This document shows positions 7,656 through 36,738 of a stretch of DNA of 64,000 nucleotides, one piece after another. The notes beneath the pieces are model-generated. The model did no database searches. It was not told the DNA's origin and saw only the letters and a list, made by a program, of their open reading frames with translations. Source of the DNA: Octopus sinensis (lineage: Eukaryota). Location: NCBI RefSeq assembly GCF_006345805.1, contig NC_043003.1:11656001-11720000 (forward strand), read 5' to 3'. The translations under genes were made by a program, and so were the position numbers. The stretch's first letter is position 1; the number at the start of each line of letters is the position of its first letter.

Positions 7656-8201
7656 ATTTTTTTTTGTTTCATTTCGTACTTGAAAATTTGGCAGTATAAA
7701 ACTAAGACTGTTTAGGAGAATGAGGAAATGGTCCTCATTTGTTGTTCTTCATTTCATGATTTGATTTAAGTCAATTAGAAGAGATTTTTGTTGGTAGTTT
7801 TGATGTTCATCTTTCATGTTCTTAAAACTGACCAGATTAGCAACTTTACTCTTTTAAATCCTGAAGTGGTTTATTAGGCCAATATTTGCACAAAATCCAT
7901 GGTTACAGTGGGGGGGGGGCATAATAGCAGAATCTGGATCTGGAGGGACCCTTGCTTTCCAAACAGACCTCTTCTTAATTTTTCTGATCATTTCTGATTC
8001 TGAGTGCAGTATTCTAAGTCTACACAACACTATGTCACAATAACTGGACATGAACTCTAAGTTACACTTTTGCAGGGTTGTTTTAAGAGGGCTTTATGTC
8101 TCTGCCAAAACCCAACTGCTGTTTCGCCAATGTTATACTTACTTAAATCTAGTCTAAGAGAGTTGACCTTAAAAAGAAAATCTGGTTGTTTTAGAACTAT
8201 T

Positions 8202-8406
8202 TTACTCTTTTACTTGTTTCATTCATTTGACTGCAGCCATGCTGGAGCACCACCTTTAGTCGAGCAAATCGACCCCCAAGACTTATTCTTTGTAAACCTA
8301 GTACTTATTCTATCAGTCTCTTTTGCTAAACTGCTAAGTTACGGTGACATAAACACACCAGCATTGGTTGTCAAGCAATGTTGGTGGAACAAACACAGAC
8401 ACACAA

Positions 8407-8467
<61 letters not shown>

Positions 8468-8635
8468 CATACATATATACGACAGGCTTCTTTCAGTTTC
8501 TGTCTACCAAATCCGCTCAAAACTTTGGTCGGCCCAAGGCTATAGTAGAAGACACTTTTCCAAGGTGCCACGTAGTAGGACTGAACCCGGAACCATGTGG
8601 TTCGTAAGCAAGCTACTTACCACACAACCACTCAT
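8202..8635 (-). mobile_element. SINE family B with internal (CA)n/(TA)n tract
   Basis: Reverse complement of gagtggctgtgtggtaagtagcttg...ggttccgggttcagtccc...tgactgaaacaagtaaaagag; at least 13 related copies in the window. Confidence 0.85.
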
Positions 8636-8931
8636 ACGCTTTACATTTGACACTAATCTGAATGCTAAAGGGTTAAGTACTCTGATTATGTCTATTTTAT
8701 TTTCTGTATTAATGTCCTAAACCTTTTGTATTCATGTCTATAAACTCAAATAGGATTTCTATTTTTTTCTTCTTTTGTGATTTCATGAATGGATAAACGA
8801 TTCATTTTGGTTTCTTTATTTTAGGAAAATACATTACAATATGTTTTTGATTTTTTTATCATTTGTTTTTGACATTTTGTTTATTGATTATAAACATCAT
8901 TAACGTTGAGTTTTTTCTTTGTGTTTTTCAG

Positions 8932-10434
8932 ATTGGAGTGGCCAGTCTTAGTATGTCACATGGTGGTCATCGACCTGAGGAAATGAAGTCTGACTCTGTA
9001 CACCCTCACATTGCCGGTCACCATCATCATCCTGGTCATCACCATACAGCAGAGGAAGAAGAGTATGTTATTGAAGTGGACAGTGATCTAAGCCCCACAG
9101 GGCCAGATATTATCAGGGAGGTGGATCATGACCACCACAATGTAAAAGTGAAATTGAAACGGAGGCGGCGTTGTGGAATTTGTGGTCCTTGTCAAATCAA
9201 GCAGAACTGCGGCCGTTGTCACTACTGTCTGCGTCGGGATGTCTTAAAGCAGACATGTGTCTACCGCAAGTGTGTCTACTTGAGGAGCAAACCACGGAGC
9301 ATGAGCCCAAAGGAAAATGTTTCTATGTCTGCTCTCAACTTGCAGTCAGGACTTGGCGTTGCCACACCAACGGACCTTAGTATCCGAACCAGCCTAACGC
9401 AAACTACTTCAGGGACGTCTTCGAATGACTTTCAAGGACTCTCGTCTATGTACCACCATCCAGATCTTGATTCGAGAGCCTTCACTGGTAGTTCGCCCTC
9501 AATTCCATTGCATCATGATCCGGTCATCCCATCAAGGATGAACCCGTATATGGGAGGTGCTCACACTGGACCTTACCCAATCAATATGTTTCCTAGCAGC
9601 AGTTTAGCTGCCAACTCAAGTTTACCAAGTCCATTTCAGATGGGTAGCTGTAGTAATAGCCCGTTCCGGTATCCTTGGATGCCCGGTTCATTTGCAAGAC
9701 CATCTGTTGTGTCCAGTCCCACTGATCTTCTCCGGCCATCGCCATCTTGGCCTCCCCCTCCGCCACCAACTCATGGACTTTCCTCCACGCACCAAAGAAT
9801 GGCTTCAGACTTTGGCGCAAACTCATTTCAAAAGGATATGCCATTTATGAAACGGCGCTCGCAACAGGATCTTTTGCAAAATAGACAGAGACTTCCATCT
9901 TGTAGCAGATCGCTGGCTCCAATGTGTGGAAGTTCCCCTAGTGGGTGTGAGACCCCAGCTTGTTTCAACTCGGATGCATTGGTAATGCGTGAAAAATACA
10001 GCTGTTTCCCTGGGCAGGGCTCTCGATCTATAGGCTGCGACAATAGTGGTCACATGACATCAGGGACTTTGAATAGTAGCTACAACCGAGGATGTGCATC
10101 GTCACAGCATGAGTGTGACGTCATCGGCATTGACGATTTGCAGGTGAATGCCTTTATCAGAGCTAGTGGCTATAACGGTTTAGACATAGAGGTAGATATA
10201 TCAAAATTGCCTATTGTACCCAGCAGTGGGAAGAGTAAAGGCAAATCCACTCTTAATGGAATGGTAAGCATTACGCAGGACTTAGGAGACAAGGGTACTG
10301 TGGAATTACAGGTACCAGGGTACAAAGTAACCTTAGAAGATCACATTAATGTCGATGAAATGCTTGCCAAGTACACTCGTAGTTTAAAACCTAGTTACGC
10401 TTTGAAACAACCAAAGATTGAATTAATAGATTAG
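8932..10434 (+). CDS. CXXC-type zinc-finger protein (TET/CXXC4/CXXC5-like finger), major and terminal coding exon
   Basis: 500-codon stop-free, repeat-free, GC-enriched frame after the acceptor ttttttctttgtgtttttcag (AG 8930-8931). Contains KRRRRCGICGPCQIKQNCGRCHYCLRRDVLKQTCVYRKC (CxxCxxC-x5-CxxCxxC-x9-C-x4-C, 9157-9273). TAG at 10432-10434. The TTG start at 8863 in the track is intronic. Confidence 0.92.
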   Translation: MGVASLSMSHGGHRPEEMKSDSVHPHIAGHHHHPGHHHTAEEEEYVIEVDSDLSPTGPDIIREVDHDHHNVKVKLKRRRRCGICGPCQIKQNCGRCHYCLRRDVLKQTCVYRKCVYLRSKPRSMSPKENVSMSALNLQSGLGVATPTDLSIRTSLTQTTSGTSSNDFQGLSSMYHHPDLDSRAFTGSSPSIPLHHDPVIPSRMNPYMGGAHTGPYPINMFPSSSLAANSSLPSPFQMGSCSNSPFRYPWMPGSFARPSVVSSPTDLLRPSPSWPPPPPPTHGLSSTHQRMASDFGANSFQKDMPFMKRRSQQDLLQNRQRLPSCSRSLAPMCGSSPSGCETPACFNSDALVMREKYSCFPGQGSRSIGCDNSGHMTSGTLNSSYNRGCASSQHECDVIGIDDLQVNAFIRASGYNGLDIEVDISKLPIVPSSGKSKGKSTLNGMVSITQDLGDKGTVELQVPGYKVTLEDHINVDEMLAKYTRSLKPSYALKQPKIELID

Positions 10435-17160: not shown

Positions 17161-17504
17161 GTAAAATCCCACTTCCATGGGAGAATTGATTCTAAAGGCT
17201 GTTGCCTCGATATATCACGTAGCTGTTGGATATATCACATAGCTTGTGGATTCTAAAGAAGTTTGCAGGAAATTAAACTGTAACAAAGTGGAAACTTCTC
17301 TCCATGTTCTGCCAACTTGGTCTGACCTCCGTATTAAAGTGAGAATATAATCCATTTCTTACGTGAACCTGTAGAAAAAAAATATAGATCTTCTGTTTGT
17401 GTACTGATGTGCATAAGCATGCACACGCACATATGCAATATTGTATTTTTGTGAAGTTTGATTAGATTTCATATTAGGTGAAGGAATAGAATTGCAGAAT
17501 AATC

Positions 17505-18245
17505 TCTTATCTTTTACTTGTTTCAGTCATTTTGATTGTGGCCATGCTGGGGCACCATCTCGAAGGGAGATTTTAGTTGAAGAAGTCAACCCTAGGACTT
17601 GTGTTTTTTTTGAAACCTGGTACATTTTCTGTCGGTCTCCTTTGCTAAGTTACAGGGATGTAAACACATGGTGGGAGACACACACACATCAGGCTTCTAT
17701 AACTTTCCATCTACCAAACCCAGTCACAAGGCTTTGGTCAGCCCAAGGCTATAGTAGAAGACACTTGCCCAAGGTGCCACGCAGTGGGACTGAACCTGGA
17801 ACCACATGGTTGGGAAGCAAGCTTAAGGAAGCATTAAGTAGGACCAGTTGTTGACTACTTTCTTTTCCTCTAATTCACCAGTCCAACATCTTTGTCTTTT
17901 AAATGGACTGTGACCATGCTGGAGCACCACCTTGAAGGGTTTTGATCCAACAGATCAACCCCAGTACTAATTTTTGTGTCCTATAACCATTTTTTGCTGA
18001 ACCACTTAGTTATAGGGATGTAAACAAACCAACACTAGTAGTCAAGCAGCAACGGTGGTAGTGGTGAGTTACATACATGCATCATATATATATAATGAGC
18101 TTCCATACAGTTTCCATCTTCACTCACATGTTATTGGTGAGTCTGGGGCTATAATAGAAGACACTTGCTCAAGGTGCTGTGCCGTGGGACTGAACCCAAA
18201 GCCATGTGGATGCAAAGTAAGCTTTTTAGCCTCACAGCCATGCTG
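17505..18245 (-). mobile_element. Two consecutive SINE family B copies
   Basis: Copies at about 17505-17822 and 17895-18245, each with ggctatagtagaagacacttgcccaagg...gggactgaacc. Confidence 0.75.
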
Positions 18246-19664: not shown

Positions 19665-19702
19665 CATAATACCATACATACATACATATGTATATATGTA
19701 TG

Positions 19703-19761
<59 letters not shown>

Positions 19762-20611
19762 GTATGTATATATATGTATGTATGTGTATATGTATGTGTA
19801 TATGTATGTATATGTATGTATAATATATATGTATATGTATATAATATATATATATATATGTATATATTATATGTATATATGTATGTATATATATGTAATA
19901 TATATGTATATGTATGTGATATATATGTATATATATATTATGTATGTATATATATGTATATTATGTATATGTATGTATATATATATGTATAGTATGTGTA
20001 TATATGTATATGTATGTGTTATATATGTATATGTATGTTATATATATGTATGTATATTATATATGTATATATATATATGTATGTATATATATATGTATAT
20101 ATATGTATGTATATATATATGTATGTGTATATATATATGTATGTATATATTTATGTATGTATATATATTATGTATGTATATATTGTATGTATATATATGT
20201 ATGTATATATGTATGTATATATATGTATATATATATGTATGTTATATATATGTATGTATATGTATGTGTATATGTATGTATGTATATGTATGTATATGTA
20301 TATGTATATATATATATATGTATATATATATGTATATGTATATATGTATATGTATGTATATGTATATATATGTATATATATATGTATATGTATGTGTATA
20401 TATATGTATATATATATGTATATGTATGTGTATATATATGTATATATATATATGTATATGTATGTATATATATATGTATATGTATGTATATATATATGTA
20501 TATGTATGTGTATATATATGTATATGTATGTATATATATATGTATATGTATGTGTATATATATGTATATGTATGTGTATATATATGTATATGTATGTATA
20601 TATATATGTGT

Positions 20612-20652
<41 letters not shown>

Positions 20653-20677
20653 TATGTATGTATATATTTATGTATGT

Positions 20678-20731
<54 letters not shown>

Positions 20732-20765
20732 GTATATATATGTATGTATATATATATATGTATGT

Positions 20766-20855
<90 letters not shown>

Positions 20856-21000
20856 GTATATATATGTATGTATGTATATATATATATGTATATATATGTA
20901 TGTATGTATATATATATATGTATATATATGTATGTATATATATATATGTATATATATGTATGTATGTATATATATATGTATATATGCATGTGTATATGTA
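19665..21000. repeat. About 1.3-kb degenerate (TA)n/(TATG)n microsatellite
   Basis: Direct reading; source of the 270-450 aa Y/I/M/V/C ORFs. Confidence 0.97.
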
Positions 21001-21886
21001 CTTCTTAAAGACATGCTTTGCTTTTATTGAGCTTCCTGGTGTAGAGTAAGCTCCCTTGTTAGAGATAGGCCAGTTTTGTTCCAAGCGATTTCACTTCAAT
21101 TACTTCTTCGCTATTGCCCGTGGATAGAATCAGACGGGTGGGGGGTTGTGGTGATGTGTATCACGTAATCTCATTACCGTCTCCTTTACTCCCCCCTATT
21201 GACTTATGTCAGCATAACTAATCACCCATTGATGGATATAGAGCATTATTAATAGACAAGCATTTGATGTTTAACTACTTGTTCATATATATTTGTGCAT
21301 ATGTGTCTGTGTGTATATATATGTATGTATATAAATATATAGATATATATGTATGTATGTATGTACATGTGTGTGTCTGTGTGATGATGTTTTCCACTAA
21401 AAAGTAACGCTACCACAGCTGACGTTTGCATGTGTGTGTTTATGACTATTTGTGTATATGTATGTGTATACATACGTATATATACACACATGTAAGCAAT
21501 ATACGCACCAAAGAATATTGGTGAAGAATGTGTGTATATGTGTTGCCCCTTTCATGTCTGATTTGTGTCGGGTACGTTAGCGAGCGCCAAATGAAAATCT
21601 GATTTGGAAATCTTCTTCTTCAAATCTATTCTTGGAAGCATGTATTTTCTTTTCATATATTTTTCTTTGATTCTTTCTTCTTCTGAACAGTAAAGAGAAT
21701 GGTAATATGGAATCTCTCTCTCTCTCTCCTGTCTTTTCTCTTTCTCTGTCCCTATTTACAAGTGTGTGCACACATACACGCATATATATACATATAAACA
21801 TGCAAATGTATATGTGTTTATATATTTATGCATGTATGCATATATATATTTATGTGTTAATGTGTATAAAGAAATGAGTATGTGTC

Positions 21887-22318: not shown

Positions 22319-22794
22319 GATCATCATCATCACCATCATTAAACGGATTTGCAGAAATGGTAGAGCACTGAATGAAATGCCGCCTGCAGTATTTAGTTTC
22401 TTGTCTGTGATCTATGTTAAAATATTGCCAGATCCCCTTTCGATGGATCCTGTCTTTTCAATTGTGGCCATTTCAATTTACTCAATTGCTCCAGTCGGTC
22501 TCTGTTATATATATCTTGTTTATAAAACTACCCTTCCTCGTTTTCTAATTTCAAATCCAGGGTAAGGCAGTGGCTGACAGTTGGCTTTGCTTCTTGTTCT
22601 GACATCCATTCTATCTATCCCCACCAGTAAGAACCAGTCCTGTAGTTAATAAGGGATTGTATCAATTAATTACAGTTCTCACCAAAAATGTGTGTCCCTG
22701 TACCAATGTTAGTCATTACATTAGAAATCATACCCTCCCCCTCATTATGTGTATGTCTTGTATTATCTTCATTACTGATCATGTATTTATTTAT

Positions 22795-22990
22795 CTTTTT
22801 TTTTTACTTGTTTCAGTCATTAGACTGCGGCCATGCTGGGGCACTGCCTTCGAGAATTTTTCATCAAATGAATCGAACCCTTGTATTTTTTTTATTTGTT
22901 TTTGTAGTAAGCTTGCTGCTTATTCTATTGGTCTTTGTTGCTGAACCACTTAGTTATGGGAACATAACCACACCAACACCGGTTTGCAAT
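22795..22990 (-). mobile_element. SINE family B, 3' fragment
   Basis: ttttacttgtttcagtcattagactgcggccatgctgg...gaaccacttagttatggg. Confidence 0.7.
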
Positions 22991-24711
22991 CATTTGCTTA
23001 AGATCCATATTCTAGTGTGTGTGTGTGTGTGTCCCAGTCCCTAAGTATTGTAATATCAATTATTTAACTTTTATTGTGTCTTTTTATATTTATTCATTTA
23101 TTTTTCATTGCAACAATATCAGATCTCCTACATTTTGTCTCTTGCTAAGCTTTGTTTGGATGGCAAAAAATCCTCAAAGGATTTTCATATCTTTGGACTT
23201 TACCATTCTGGGAGGTTGGTGTTCTTAGCATTTTTTCTGTCCTTTTTAATTTGACTTATTATTAGTGTTGTTATTGTTGTTGACAATGTTAAAGCATATT
23301 CACATCAGCGATGTCGTCAGATTTGTAACCTGTGAATTTGTAAAAAAAACACGTTTTCATAGCAAAACCATTTTTGTCTCTTGTAGACATTGAGAAGGAT
23401 TCCTTACAGAACAAAAGACAGCATTTTCTCTTCTCTTTTATTCTCCGGCTCTCACTTCATGTGTTTCTCAGTGTTAATTGAACAGCTGTTGTTGTGGTGT
23501 TATTCCTAATGCTTCTCTGATACAAAATAACTTTATAACTTTCAGTCCCATCTTACAAACAGATTTCTCAGTTTTCTGAAGAATCCCCCAAATTTTTCAT
23601 TTCTCATTTGTTTCTTTTGCTTCACCTTCATCCTATGCTATAACCGAATATAGTCTCTCACATCTTTTTTACTTTTTATTTCCTCTATGTTGACCATATT
23701 TGCTCTCAAAACACCTTTATTACATGGTCAGTTTGGATAAGCAATCACAGACTCTTTCAGCATTCATTTTATTCCATTTCTTTTTTTTTTTTTTTTAATC
23801 TCAATTTCAGCTTCTGGTTGGCCATGGTACTAATTCACATGGATTTTTTTTTTGTTTCAGTATTTGAGTTCGATATATTGAGGGGTGAGCCTGCTTAAAA
23901 TGCTTCATCTAGGACAATGTCTTGTCAAAACTTTTTCCATGATGACACTACGACTCATATTTTGTGACACCTCTGACTAATATTTTTAACACTTTTAAAA
24001 GATTATATTAATGTTCTCACGATTCCAAGTCTATACTATAGACTCTAAAAGGAGGGAAGTCAAAAAATGCGCAACGGTTTCAGTCTACCAATTAAAAAAC
24101 AGGCTCACTAAAAGAGTCTGTATTTTCAGATCTATCGAATCCATGCTAAAATGTGAAGTTTGGCTGCAAACCAATTTTAAAATATCAGGATAATTTTGGT
24201 CTTAACCAAAATGTTGATTATTCCATTTTATATTTAGTCACAAGAATTTTGATGATGTAATGCATGCCAAACCATGTATATGCTCAGATTATGTAACACT
24301 TAAGTTCGTATATGCTTTTTATAAATAACCATTTCAAAAAAAAATATATACCCAATTAATAAAGTGAATATTCATATATAGCTACTATTGCATAAATCAA
24401 CATACATTAACATAATCATTCATTCATATATATATATATGTGTGTGTGTGTGTGTTTGTATATTCATTCATATGTATACATGTGTGTATGTATATATATA
24501 TATGTGTATATTCACATTATCAGTAAACAAGTCACTCTACTATACACACACACACACAATACACAGTGGTGTCACTTGGTTTAAAAATGTATATGCTTAT
24601 GACTTACTGTTATTTCTTTCTATTTAATTAATTACAACTCAAATTAAATATGAATTATTTTTTTTTCCTTTTTACTTTATTTTCAATGATGTAAGTTAAA
24701 AGTTGAAGTCA

Positions 24712-35804: not shown

Positions 35805-36738
<934 letters not shown>

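What the first reader, a model, noticed from the sequence alone, without database searches (positions are those of the whole stretch)
9157..9294. Stand-alone TET/IDAX-type CXXC finger with a KQ rather than HQ recognition motif
Seen: finger KRRRRCGICGPCQIKQNCGRCHYCLRRDVLKQTCVYRKCVYLRSKP in an ORF that stops at 10434 with no dioxygenase domain. Known: the short 9-residue linker without KFGG and the RKC..L.KKP ending are typical of TET1/TET3/CXXC4(IDAX)/CXXC5, which carry HQ. KQ at that position is typical of the KFGG-class CpG readers (KDM2, MLL). Inference: a catalytic-domain-free CpG reader with hybrid specificity features in a probable mollusc, possibly an IDAX/RINF-like regulator that arose independently of the vertebrate TET2 inversion.
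Basis: partly seen in the sequence, partly recalled or inferred. Interest (0 to 1): 0.75.

Follow-up and report, generated by a model that had tools for sequence, protein, structure and literature searches.

The report
Mollusc-wide stand-alone CXXC finger protein
This octopus gene encodes a TET/IDAX-type zinc-finger DNA reader with no enzyme attached; it belongs to an uncharacterised protein family found across molluscs, animals whose TET demethylase is reported to lack this finger.

Summary
Window 9157-9294 (+) encodes an eight-cysteine CXXC finger that passes Pfam's cut-off. It aligns without gaps to the solved TET1, TET3, CXXC5 and CXXC4 fingers, with a 9-residue linker, no KFGG, and KQ where those have HQ.

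It lies in the large last coding exon (8932-10434) of an annotated Octopus bimaculoides gene, LOC106871426, 'uncharacterized'. A 15-codon first exon lies 93 kb upstream. The stop codon is the family's conserved C-terminus. The only Tet_JBP exons in the genome are on another chromosome, which carries no CXXC finger.

The protein belongs to an orphan family. Every named member is a mollusc: cephalopod, bivalves, gastropods, chiton. All members share an acidic N-terminal motif, a near-invariant finger with LKQ, a long disordered linker and a C-terminal beta-strand module with no detectable relatives.

It is not a CXXC4/5 orthologue: the architecture differs, the Dvl motif is missing, and it sits outside the TET+CXXC4/5 finger clade.

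KQ on a short linker is not unique. Hydra TET, a sponge protein and about 15 other clusters have it.

Most likely it reads unmethylated CpG and recruits an unknown partner. A link to TET, which published work reports as CXXC-less in spiralians, is plausible but unproven. No RNA reads could be examined.

The parts
8932..10434 (+). Last coding exon (exon 2) of the gene, including the stop codon. It follows a polypyrimidine tract and AG acceptor at 8911-8931. It encodes all but the first 15 residues of the 515-aa annotated protein.
   Evidence: ORF. The acceptor sequence ttttttctttgtgtttttcag|ATT is seen. P0001 joins ...GLPLQ|IGVASLS at this point and ends at the same stop. Exon 1 (ATG...CAG|gtaagt) is outside the window at G000:C7:11571561-11571605, 93.3 kb upstream.
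9052..9087 (+). Acidic N-terminal motif EEEEYVIEVDSD. It corresponds to the family consensus EEFVIExxxD.
   Evidence: Family alignments A1 and A2.
9157..9294 (+). CXXC zinc finger with its basic flanks (KRRRR...RSKP). The first cysteine is at 9172-9174 and the eighth at 9271-9273.
   Evidence: Translation; Pfam PF02008 at 29.6 bits; PDB matches to TET1, TET3 and CXXC4/5. 33 of 33 family fingers have the same cysteine pattern and linker length.
9244..9252 (+). The tripeptide LKQ, at the position of the DNA-reading tripeptide. TET1 and TET3 have SHQ here and CXXC4/5 have GHQ.
   Evidence: Gapless alignments. The role of the tripeptide is taken from PMC3685328. D96, V97, L98, K99 and Q100 are invariant in A2.
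9301..10101 (+). Long Ser/Pro-rich linker, poorly conserved and predicted to be disordered. It contains short conserved islands; the bivalve 'CMY' and 'GCPKNG' motifs are degenerate in octopus.
   Evidence: AlphaFold2 pLDDT below 50 across this stretch; alignment A1.
10102..10197 (+). C-terminal module, part 1 (SQHECDVIGIDDLQVNAFIRASGYNGLDIEVD). Three beta strands are predicted.
   Evidence: Invariant columns S384, I391, D394, D395, A400, I402, R403, G406, N408, I412 and E413; AF2 model with pLDDT 74-76.
10252..10431 (+). C-terminal module, part 2 (GMVSITQDLGDKGTVELQVPGYKVTLED...), followed by the conserved tail up to the natural C-terminus.
   Evidence: Invariant columns V438, Q442, D443, G445, G448, G456, K458 and E462; AF2 pLDDT up to 88. 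The module occurs only once in the genome. No Pfam, PDB fold or Atlas match was found.

Best explanation
The finger belongs to a real protein-coding gene with two coding exons in Octopus bimaculoides or a very close relative. The gene encodes a nuclear DNA-reader and adaptor protein of a mollusc-wide orphan family.

Shown:
- The protein has one type-3 (short-linker) CXXC zinc finger near its N-terminus. All eight zinc ligands are present, the flanks are basic, and the LKQ tripeptide is invariant across the family.
- A long disordered linker follows the finger.
- A conserved C-terminal beta-strand module, about 110 residues long, has no detectable relatives.
- No catalytic domain is present.

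Inferred:
- The finger wedges into the major groove and reads unmethylated CpG through LKQ, as the KQ/RQ and HQ tripeptides do in solved CXXC-DNA complexes.
- The N-terminal acidic motif and the C-terminal module recruit a partner that is still unknown.
- The protein therefore links unmethylated CpG-rich DNA to some chromatin or signalling activity.

It works like the vertebrate CXXC-only proteins CXXC4 and CXXC5 but is not their orthologue.
For: - Finger identity.
- Gene model: P0001 is 99% identical and ends at the same stop. The acceptor and the exon-1 donor are canonical.
- Family size: a full-length profile search of 1.84 billion representative proteins gave only 106 hits at E<=1e-3. The 29 hits at E<1e-30 appear to be family members or fragments of them.
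- Taxa: every named member is a mollusc. Genera named are Octopus; Crassostrea, Saccostrea, Pinctada, Mizuhopecten, Tegillarca, Mya, Mactra, Potamilus and Sinanodonta; Haliotis, Patella, Lottia, Biomphalaria, Lymnaea, Nucella, Babylonia, Bradybaena, Plakobranchus and Elysia; and the chiton Liolophura.
- Selection: the finger is near-identical across four mollusc classes, and the invariant columns include DVLKQ.
- No Tet_JBP or other Pfam domain was found in the members scanned here or in their precomputed listings, including the 1023-1281 aa chiton and limpet proteins.
- The role of the KQ/HQ tripeptide in CpG reading comes from PMC3685328.
Against: - DNA binding and CpG or methylation preference are inferred from homology only.
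Expression and splicing rest on the database model and on short public assembly (Logan/ENA) contigs that carry whole orthologue ORFs.
- The C-terminal module has only a moderate-confidence model (mean pLDDT 66.7, pTM 0.31) and no fold match, so its adaptor role is a guess.
- No partner is known.
Confidence: 0.6

Rival explanations
1. TET-derived partner. The family is the detached N-terminal CXXC module of the ancestral animal TET. It was split off in the mollusc (or spiralian) stem and still acts in trans on the now CXXC-less TET, targeting or regulating it as IDAX does for TET2.
For: - The octopus has one TET locus, on contig C1, and no CXXC match at all on C1. All five short-linker fingers lie elsewhere.
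- Published work states that TETs of annelids and other spiralians lack the CXXC domain, unlike those of deuterostomes (PMC11292947).
- The finger's best solved relatives are TET fingers.
- A genuine TET finger with KQ exists in Hydra.
- The vertebrate precedent of a TET-CXXC split is described in PMC3653909.
Against: - The finger tree puts the family (support 93/94) outside the clade holding cnidarian and vertebrate TET fingers plus CXXC4/5 (87/88). The base of the tree is unresolved on 46 columns.
- There is no synteny with TET in octopus (C7 versus C1).
- No named member comes from annelids, which also lack the TET finger.
- The octopus has two further paralogous finger genes, so which one, if any, descends from TET is open.
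- No interaction evidence exists.
Confidence: 0.2
2. Orthologue of vertebrate CXXC4/CXXC5. On this reading it is an already known family, merely unnamed in molluscs.
For: - It is a CXXC-only protein with a type-3 finger.
- CXXC5 and CXXC4 fingers match at E 2.5e-8 and 6.7e-8.
- The protein language-model search lists a CXXC5 cluster among the nearest, at a score of 0.81, which is a lead only.
Against: - The finger is N-terminal rather than C-terminal.
- The proteins are 424-1281 aa and carry a private C-terminal module.
- The KTXXXI Dvl motif is absent (RDVLKQT against KTGHQI).
- CXXC4/5-like fingers nest among vertebrate TET fingers (95/80*).
- Forcing the family and CXXC4/5 together costs 37.9 log-likelihood units, p-AU 0.08. 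That is disfavoured but not formally rejected.
- The profile-profile comparison run here on an unnamed CXXC-only protein (P0057) aligns nothing outside the finger.
Confidence: 0.05
3. This is an exon of a larger gene: transcripts skip the stop and join TET or other catalytic exons.
For: No reads could be examined here. Octopus introns are very long; the intron of this gene is 93 kb.
Against: - The stop follows a C-terminal tail conserved in position and sequence in bivalve, gastropod and chiton orthologues.
- The annotated isoform ends there.
- Tet_JBP occurs only on another chromosome.
- Short public contigs (2-4 kb) carry complete orthologue ORFs with stops.
Confidence: 0.03
4. The finger is a degenerate or structural zinc knuckle that no longer reads DNA, and the protein acts through protein contacts only.
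For: Reports on DNA binding by the TET1 finger conflict (PMC3685328). The tripeptide begins with Leu, unlike the solved examples.
Against: The eight cysteines, the basic flanks and KQ are invariant over several hundred million years of mollusc divergence, by my own estimate. That pattern is expected of a working DNA-reading surface.
Confidence: 0.08

Closest known systems
CXXC4 (IDAX) and CXXC5 (RINF), the vertebrate CXXC-only proteins
   Same: - One type-3 finger (9-residue linker, no KFGG) and no catalytic domain.
- The gene is separate from a CXXC-less TET.
- The fingers align without gaps.
   Different: - The finger is near the N-terminus, not the C-terminus.
- It has KQ rather than HQ.
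- It has no KTXXXI Dvl motif.
- It has a long disordered linker and a private C-terminal beta-strand module.
- It is not in the CXXC4/5 clade.
- It is not linked to TET in octopus.
CXXC fingers of TET1 and TET3 (solved: 6asd, 4hp1/4hp3, 5exh)
   Same: These are the best sequence matches. Linker length, cysteine spacing, the KRKRCG-type basic lead-in and the RKC..L..K tail are the same.
   Different: No Tet_JBP domain is attached here. The tripeptide is LKQ instead of SHQ. The family forms a separate clade in the finger tree.
Hydra vulgaris TET (P0092, XP_065651678)
   Same: It is a short-linker finger with KQ (KRKTGKQIC), which shows that KQ is compatible with the TET-type finger.
   Different: The Hydra finger is fused to a working-type Tet_JBP domain (162 bits). 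It lies in the TET clade, on a long branch.
Type-1 CXXC readers (CFP1, KDM2A/B, MLL1/2, DNMT1)
   Same: They carry a KQ (or RQ) dipeptide at the CpG-reading position. The octopus's own KFGG-type finger on C20 has ...KFGGPGRMKQS....
   Different: They have a 15-residue linker with KFGG, which is absent here. Their matches are weaker and gapped.
Octopus paralogues: the double-CXXC gene on C8695 (equivalent to O. sinensis LOC115228573) and the duplicated gene on C8698, plus Dicyema japonicum BAH29723
   Same: Same finger signature: (R/K)(K/D)(V/I)LKQ(T/S)C.(Y/H/L)R(K/R)C..L.
   Different: They have different tails. The C-terminal module of this gene occurs only once in the genome. They fall outside the family clade.

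Membership tests
zf-CXXC superfamily (Pfam PF02008) | Eight cysteines in two CXXCXXC clusters plus two distal Cys; profile score above the curated cut-off | tested here: met
   29.6 bits against a cut-off of 26.5, E 7.4e-7. The cysteine pattern is visible.
Type-3 CXXC (TET1, TET3, CXXC4, CXXC5) | Truncated linker between the cysteine clusters, no KFGG | tested here: met
   The linker is the 9 residues LRRDVLKQT. The alignment to 6asd, 4hp1, 5w9s and 5vc9 is gapless. The definition is from PMC3685328.
Type-3 CXXC (TET1, TET3, CXXC4, CXXC5) | HQ dipeptide in the DNA-reading loop | tested here: not met
   KQ, invariant in 33 of 33 family fingers. Among other short-linker fingers in the search set there are 34 with HQ and 17 with KQ.
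Type-3 CXXC (TET1, TET3, CXXC4, CXXC5) | Groups with TET/CXXC4/5 fingers in a phylogeny | tested here: inconclusive
   The family clade (93/94) lies beside, not inside, the TET+CXXC4/5 clade (87/88). The base is unresolved on 46 columns.
CXXC4/CXXC5 (IDAX/RINF) | Short protein with the finger at the C-terminal end | tested here: not met
   The finger is at residues 69-114 of 493, and 380 residues follow it.
CXXC4/CXXC5 (IDAX/RINF) | KTXXXI Dishevelled-binding motif inside the finger | tested here: not met
   RDVLKQT stands where CXXC4/5 have KTGHQI. The motif is described in PMC3653909.
CXXC4/CXXC5 (IDAX/RINF) | Exclusive common ancestry with CXXC4/5 fingers | tested here: inconclusive
   The constrained tree is 37.9 lnL units worse, p-AU 0.081.
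CXXC4/CXXC5 (IDAX/RINF) | Genomic neighbourhood of a TET gene (CXXC4-TET2) | tested here: not met
   The window is on C7 at 11.66 Mb and TET is on C1 at 187.63 Mb.
TET dioxygenases | Tet_JBP (2OG-Fe dioxygenase) domain in the same protein | tested here: not met
   No Tet_JBP at E<=1 in the ORF, in the family members scanned here or in the precomputed Pfam listings of the other hits. The genome's Tet_JBP exons are only on C1.
Type-1 CXXC (CFP1, KDM2, MLL, DNMT1) | Extended linker with a KFGG motif | tested here: not met
   Absent here. For contrast, the octopus C20 finger has KFGG.
Mollusc CXXC-only orphan family (defined here) | Acidic N-terminal motif, finger with DVLKQ, and the two-part C-terminal module ending at the natural C-terminus | tested here: met
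   All blocks align with the bivalve, gastropod and chiton members.

The most novel reading that the evidence does not exclude
The 'lost' CXXC finger of spiralian TET was not lost in molluscs. It lives on as this separate gene, an independent, invertebrate counterpart of the IDAX-TET2 split. On this reading the family guides or restrains the CXXC-less TET at unmethylated CpG-rich DNA through its private C-terminal module.
Probability: 0.17. Interest if true: 0.75.

Novelty: new variant of a known kind. Interest (0 to 1): 0.52.

Why it matters
CXXC-only proteins are known from vertebrates (CXXC4 and CXXC5), where they modulate TET2 and signalling. Recent methylome work notes that spiralian TETs lack the CXXC finger and asks how they find their targets (PMC11292947). 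This family is conserved from chitons to octopus, and public records give it unrelated automatic names ('mucin-2-like', 'extensin-like', 'TET3-like', 'CBP-like'). It is a concrete, testable candidate for a trans-acting reader of unmethylated CpG in molluscs. It also shows that KQ on a TET-type short linker is a widespread natural state (Hydra TET, a sponge, molluscs). That gives a natural series for testing what the H/K switch does to CpG versus non-CpG reading.

Tried and rejected
No transcript reads were seen.
- Exon 1 was not in the window or in the 60 kb upstream. It was found 93 kb upstream with a degenerate 35-base pattern.
- The joined exon 1 + exon 2 protein was not built. Searches used exon 2 by reference, and the database protein P0001 stands for the joined form.
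- C-terminal module:
  - No Pfam hit at E<=1.
  - No Atlas look-alike.
  - The full-length AF2 model is mostly disordered (mean pLDDT 42.8).
  - The module-only model has mean pLDDT 66.7.
  - Foldseek against PDB gave nothing at E<=0.001, best 0.92.
  - VIA-align wide gave a best Z of 2.5.
  - No fold was assigned.
- Homodimer test of the module (complex prediction): no verdict (score 0.00). This is not evidence either way.
- A search meant to list mollusc TET architectures used P0096 as query. P0096 turned out to be a fish TET, and only fish TETs were returned, so it was uninformative.
- The idea that the Dicyema protein is octopus contamination was rejected: it is only 52% identical.
- The idea that the paralogous fingers carry the same tail was rejected.

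Full report
**Observation**

It sits in an open frame from 8863 to 10434. Pfam finds one family only, zf-CXXC, at 29.6 bits against a curated cut-off of 26.5.

Against all solved structures, the best matches are the fingers of TET1 (6asd, E 3.3e-10), Xenopus TET3 (4hp1), CXXC5 (5w9s), CXXC4 (5vc9) and human TET3. The first four align without a gap; human TET3 needs a one-residue gap. MLL, MBD1, DNMT1 and CFP1 score lower and need gaps in the linker.

The linker between the sixth and seventh cysteine is 9 residues with no KFGG. The solved TET/CXXC4/5 fingers have S/G-H-Q at the DNA-reading position, and this one has L-K-Q.

The published classification says the same thing: type-1 has KFGG plus KQ/RQ, and type-3 has a truncated linker plus HQ (PMC3685328). 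The octopus's own KFGG-type finger on contig C20 carries KQ, as expected.

**Gene model**

The ORF product is 99% identical over its whole length to 'uncharacterized protein LOC106871426 isoform X2' of Octopus bimaculoides (515 aa), which ends at the same residue. The genome is 2.72 Gb and the window is contig C7:11656001-11720000.

The database protein begins with 15 residues that are not in the window. These join the ORF exactly at a polypyrimidine/AG acceptor, so exon 2 starts at 8932.

I found those 15 codons once in the genome, at C7:11571561-11571605. They are followed by a canonical gtaagt donor, which gives a phase-0 intron of about 93.3 kb.

I did not build the joined protein. Exon 2 was searched by reference, from its internal ATG at 8953.

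**Is it stand-alone?**

A six-frame search of the whole genome with the Tet_JBP profile finds four consecutive exons at C1:187.629-187.635 Mb and nothing else. The zf-CXXC profile and the finger itself find no match on C1 at all. So TET is on a different chromosome and has no detectable finger of its own.

This agrees with a published statement that TETs of annelids and other spiralians, unlike those of deuterostomes, lack the CXXC domain (PMC11292947).

The stop at 10432-10434 follows a C-terminal tail that is conserved in position and sequence in the orthologues. It is therefore the natural end of the protein.

RNA reads could not be examined.

**The family**

- The word-based search gave 22 relatives, all carrying only PF02008 where a domain was recorded.
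- A full-length profile (A2) run against 1.84 billion representative proteins gave only 106 hits at E<=1e-3. The 29 hits at E<1e-30 appear to be family members or fragments of them.
- Every member that carries a source name is a mollusc:
  - Octopus.
  - Nine bivalve genera.
  - Ten gastropod genera, including the limpets Patella and Lottia and the abalone Haliotis.
  - The chiton Liolophura.
- The names given by automatic annotation are inconsistent: uncharacterized, mucin-2-like, extensin-like, CREB-binding protein-like, TET3-like, ras GEF K. The family has no accepted identity.
- I found no paper describing it in four literature searches. The library searched is limited.

Members share four features:

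1. An acidic N-terminal motif (consensus EEFVIE).
2. A finger that is almost invariant across four mollusc classes (RLKRRRRCGQCGPCQVKENC.KCHYC.RKDVLKQTCIYRKCVYLRSKP).
3. A long Ser/Pro-rich linker that AlphaFold2 leaves disordered.
4. A two-part C-terminal module (consensus SSDFECDVIxIDDxQMNAxIRSDGCNSIEIEIDD and GxVxLKQDLGEEGxxQLEIPGNKVTLEE) that is predicted as beta hairpins with moderate confidence.

The C-terminal module occurs once in the octopus genome. It has no Pfam, Atlas, Foldseek or VIA-align match. A homodimer test gave no verdict.

**Relation to known fingers**

I extracted 108 fingers from the hits, the window and the octopus paralogues, and built a maximum-likelihood tree on 46 columns.

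- The mollusc family is one clade (93/94).
- A second clade (87/88) holds cnidarian and vertebrate TET fingers and the fingers that match CXXC4 and CXXC5. Tet_JBP was confirmed by Pfam in the Hydra, Sanderia and Xenia TETs, one further unnamed TET (P0082) and six vertebrate TET or TET-like proteins.
- The CXXC4/5-like fingers nest among the vertebrate TET fingers (95/80*).
- The base of the tree is unresolved.
- Forcing the family together with CXXC4/5 costs 37.9 log-likelihood units (p-AU 0.08). That is disfavoured but not formally rejected on so few columns.

Three other points argue against CXXC4/5 orthology. The finger is N-terminal. The Dvl-binding KTXXXI motif is absent (PMC3653909). No similarity was detected outside the finger: in the profile search, matches to the rest of the profile come only from family members and fragments, and a profile-profile comparison with an unnamed CXXC-only protein (P0057) aligns the finger alone. 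The protein may work like IDAX/RINF, but it is not a member of that family.

**Is KQ on a short linker special?**

Within this data set it is not. All 33 family fingers and the 6 paralogue and Dicyema fingers have KQ. Among the other short-linker fingers, 34 have HQ, 17 have KQ and 1 has RQ.

The KQ set includes the genuine TET of Hydra vulgaris (Tet_JBP 162 bits, KRKTGKQIC). It also includes a CXXC-only protein of the sponge Sycon. Other cnidarian TETs have HQ.

The 'hybrid' is therefore a recurring natural state outside vertebrates. Which state is ancestral is open.

**Mechanism**

Shown: a conserved zinc finger with all ligands, basic flanks and an invariant LKQ; no enzyme domain; a private conserved C-terminal module; strong conservation across molluscs.

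Inferred: the finger reads unmethylated CpG in the major groove as other CXXC fingers do, and the protein bridges such DNA to a partner bound by its C-terminal module and/or acidic motif.

The attractive specific version is that the partner is the CXXC-less mollusc TET and that the family is a detached TET finger. It rests on circumstantial evidence only. I put it at about one in five or six.

**Verdict**

'IDAX-like' is right as an analogy and wrong as a family assignment. The KQ feature is a family constant rather than an oddity.

The result is a new, mollusc-wide variant of the CXXC-only reader theme. It is of moderate interest and is directly testable.

Noticed in passing
L007:1393-2472 (G000:C8695:267.5-268.6 kb): A second octopus gene encodes two short-linker 'VLKQTC' CXXC fingers in one exon. 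It matches O. sinensis LOC115228573 (P0038, 508 aa; only CXXC x2 by Pfam). It has no C-terminal module like the one in this finding.
   Followed up: partly
L016:1357-2025 (-) and L017:1357-1959 (-) (G000:C8698, about 211.1 kb and 194.3 kb): Two near-identical copies, about 17 kb apart, of a third finger exon (…CLKRKVLKQSCIYRKCIYLRDKP). Each lies beside an identical 129-aa ORF that looks to me like part of a protein-tyrosine-phosphatase domain (not tested). This is either a tandem duplication or an assembly duplicate on an unplaced scaffold.
   Followed up: partly
P0045 versus L016:1360-2025:-: A Dicyema japonicum protein (BAH29723, 215 aa) is 52% identical over 174 residues to the C8698 octopus ORF, finger included. 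Dicyemids are parasites of cephalopod kidneys. The identity is too low for simple host contamination, so this looks like a true dicyemid orthologue.
   Followed up: partly
L028:1501-1545 (G000:C7:11571561-11571605): The gene's first coding exon (15 codons, donor gtaagt) lies 93.3 kb upstream of exon 2, outside the window.
   Followed up: yes
window 8070-8720, 17492-17854, 22688-23044 (+): Three ORFs share a motif (DC[SG]HAGA…SY[GR]D[IV]NT…LWSAQGYSRRH..KVPRS.TEPGT). This is probably a dispersed repeat element. One copy ends about 200 bp before the acceptor of exon 2.
   Followed up: no
window 19688-21084, 35955-36434, 705-1208: Long (TA/CA)-type microsatellite and low-complexity tracts produce spurious long ORFs rich in Y, I, C, M and H. 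No other convincing coding exon was seen among ORFs of 110 aa or more in the 64-kb window.
   Followed up: no
P0039 (424 aa); P0055, P0057, P0059, P0060, P0077: P0039 has no source name and is the most divergent full family member. A separate group of unnamed CXXC-only proteins (P0057 and its cluster 370-400 aa; the other representatives 101-172 aa) with 'NRAKGKQIC' also pairs a short linker with KQ. The language-model search points to arthropod CXXC-only clusters, at a score of 0.82, which is a lead only.
   Followed up: partly
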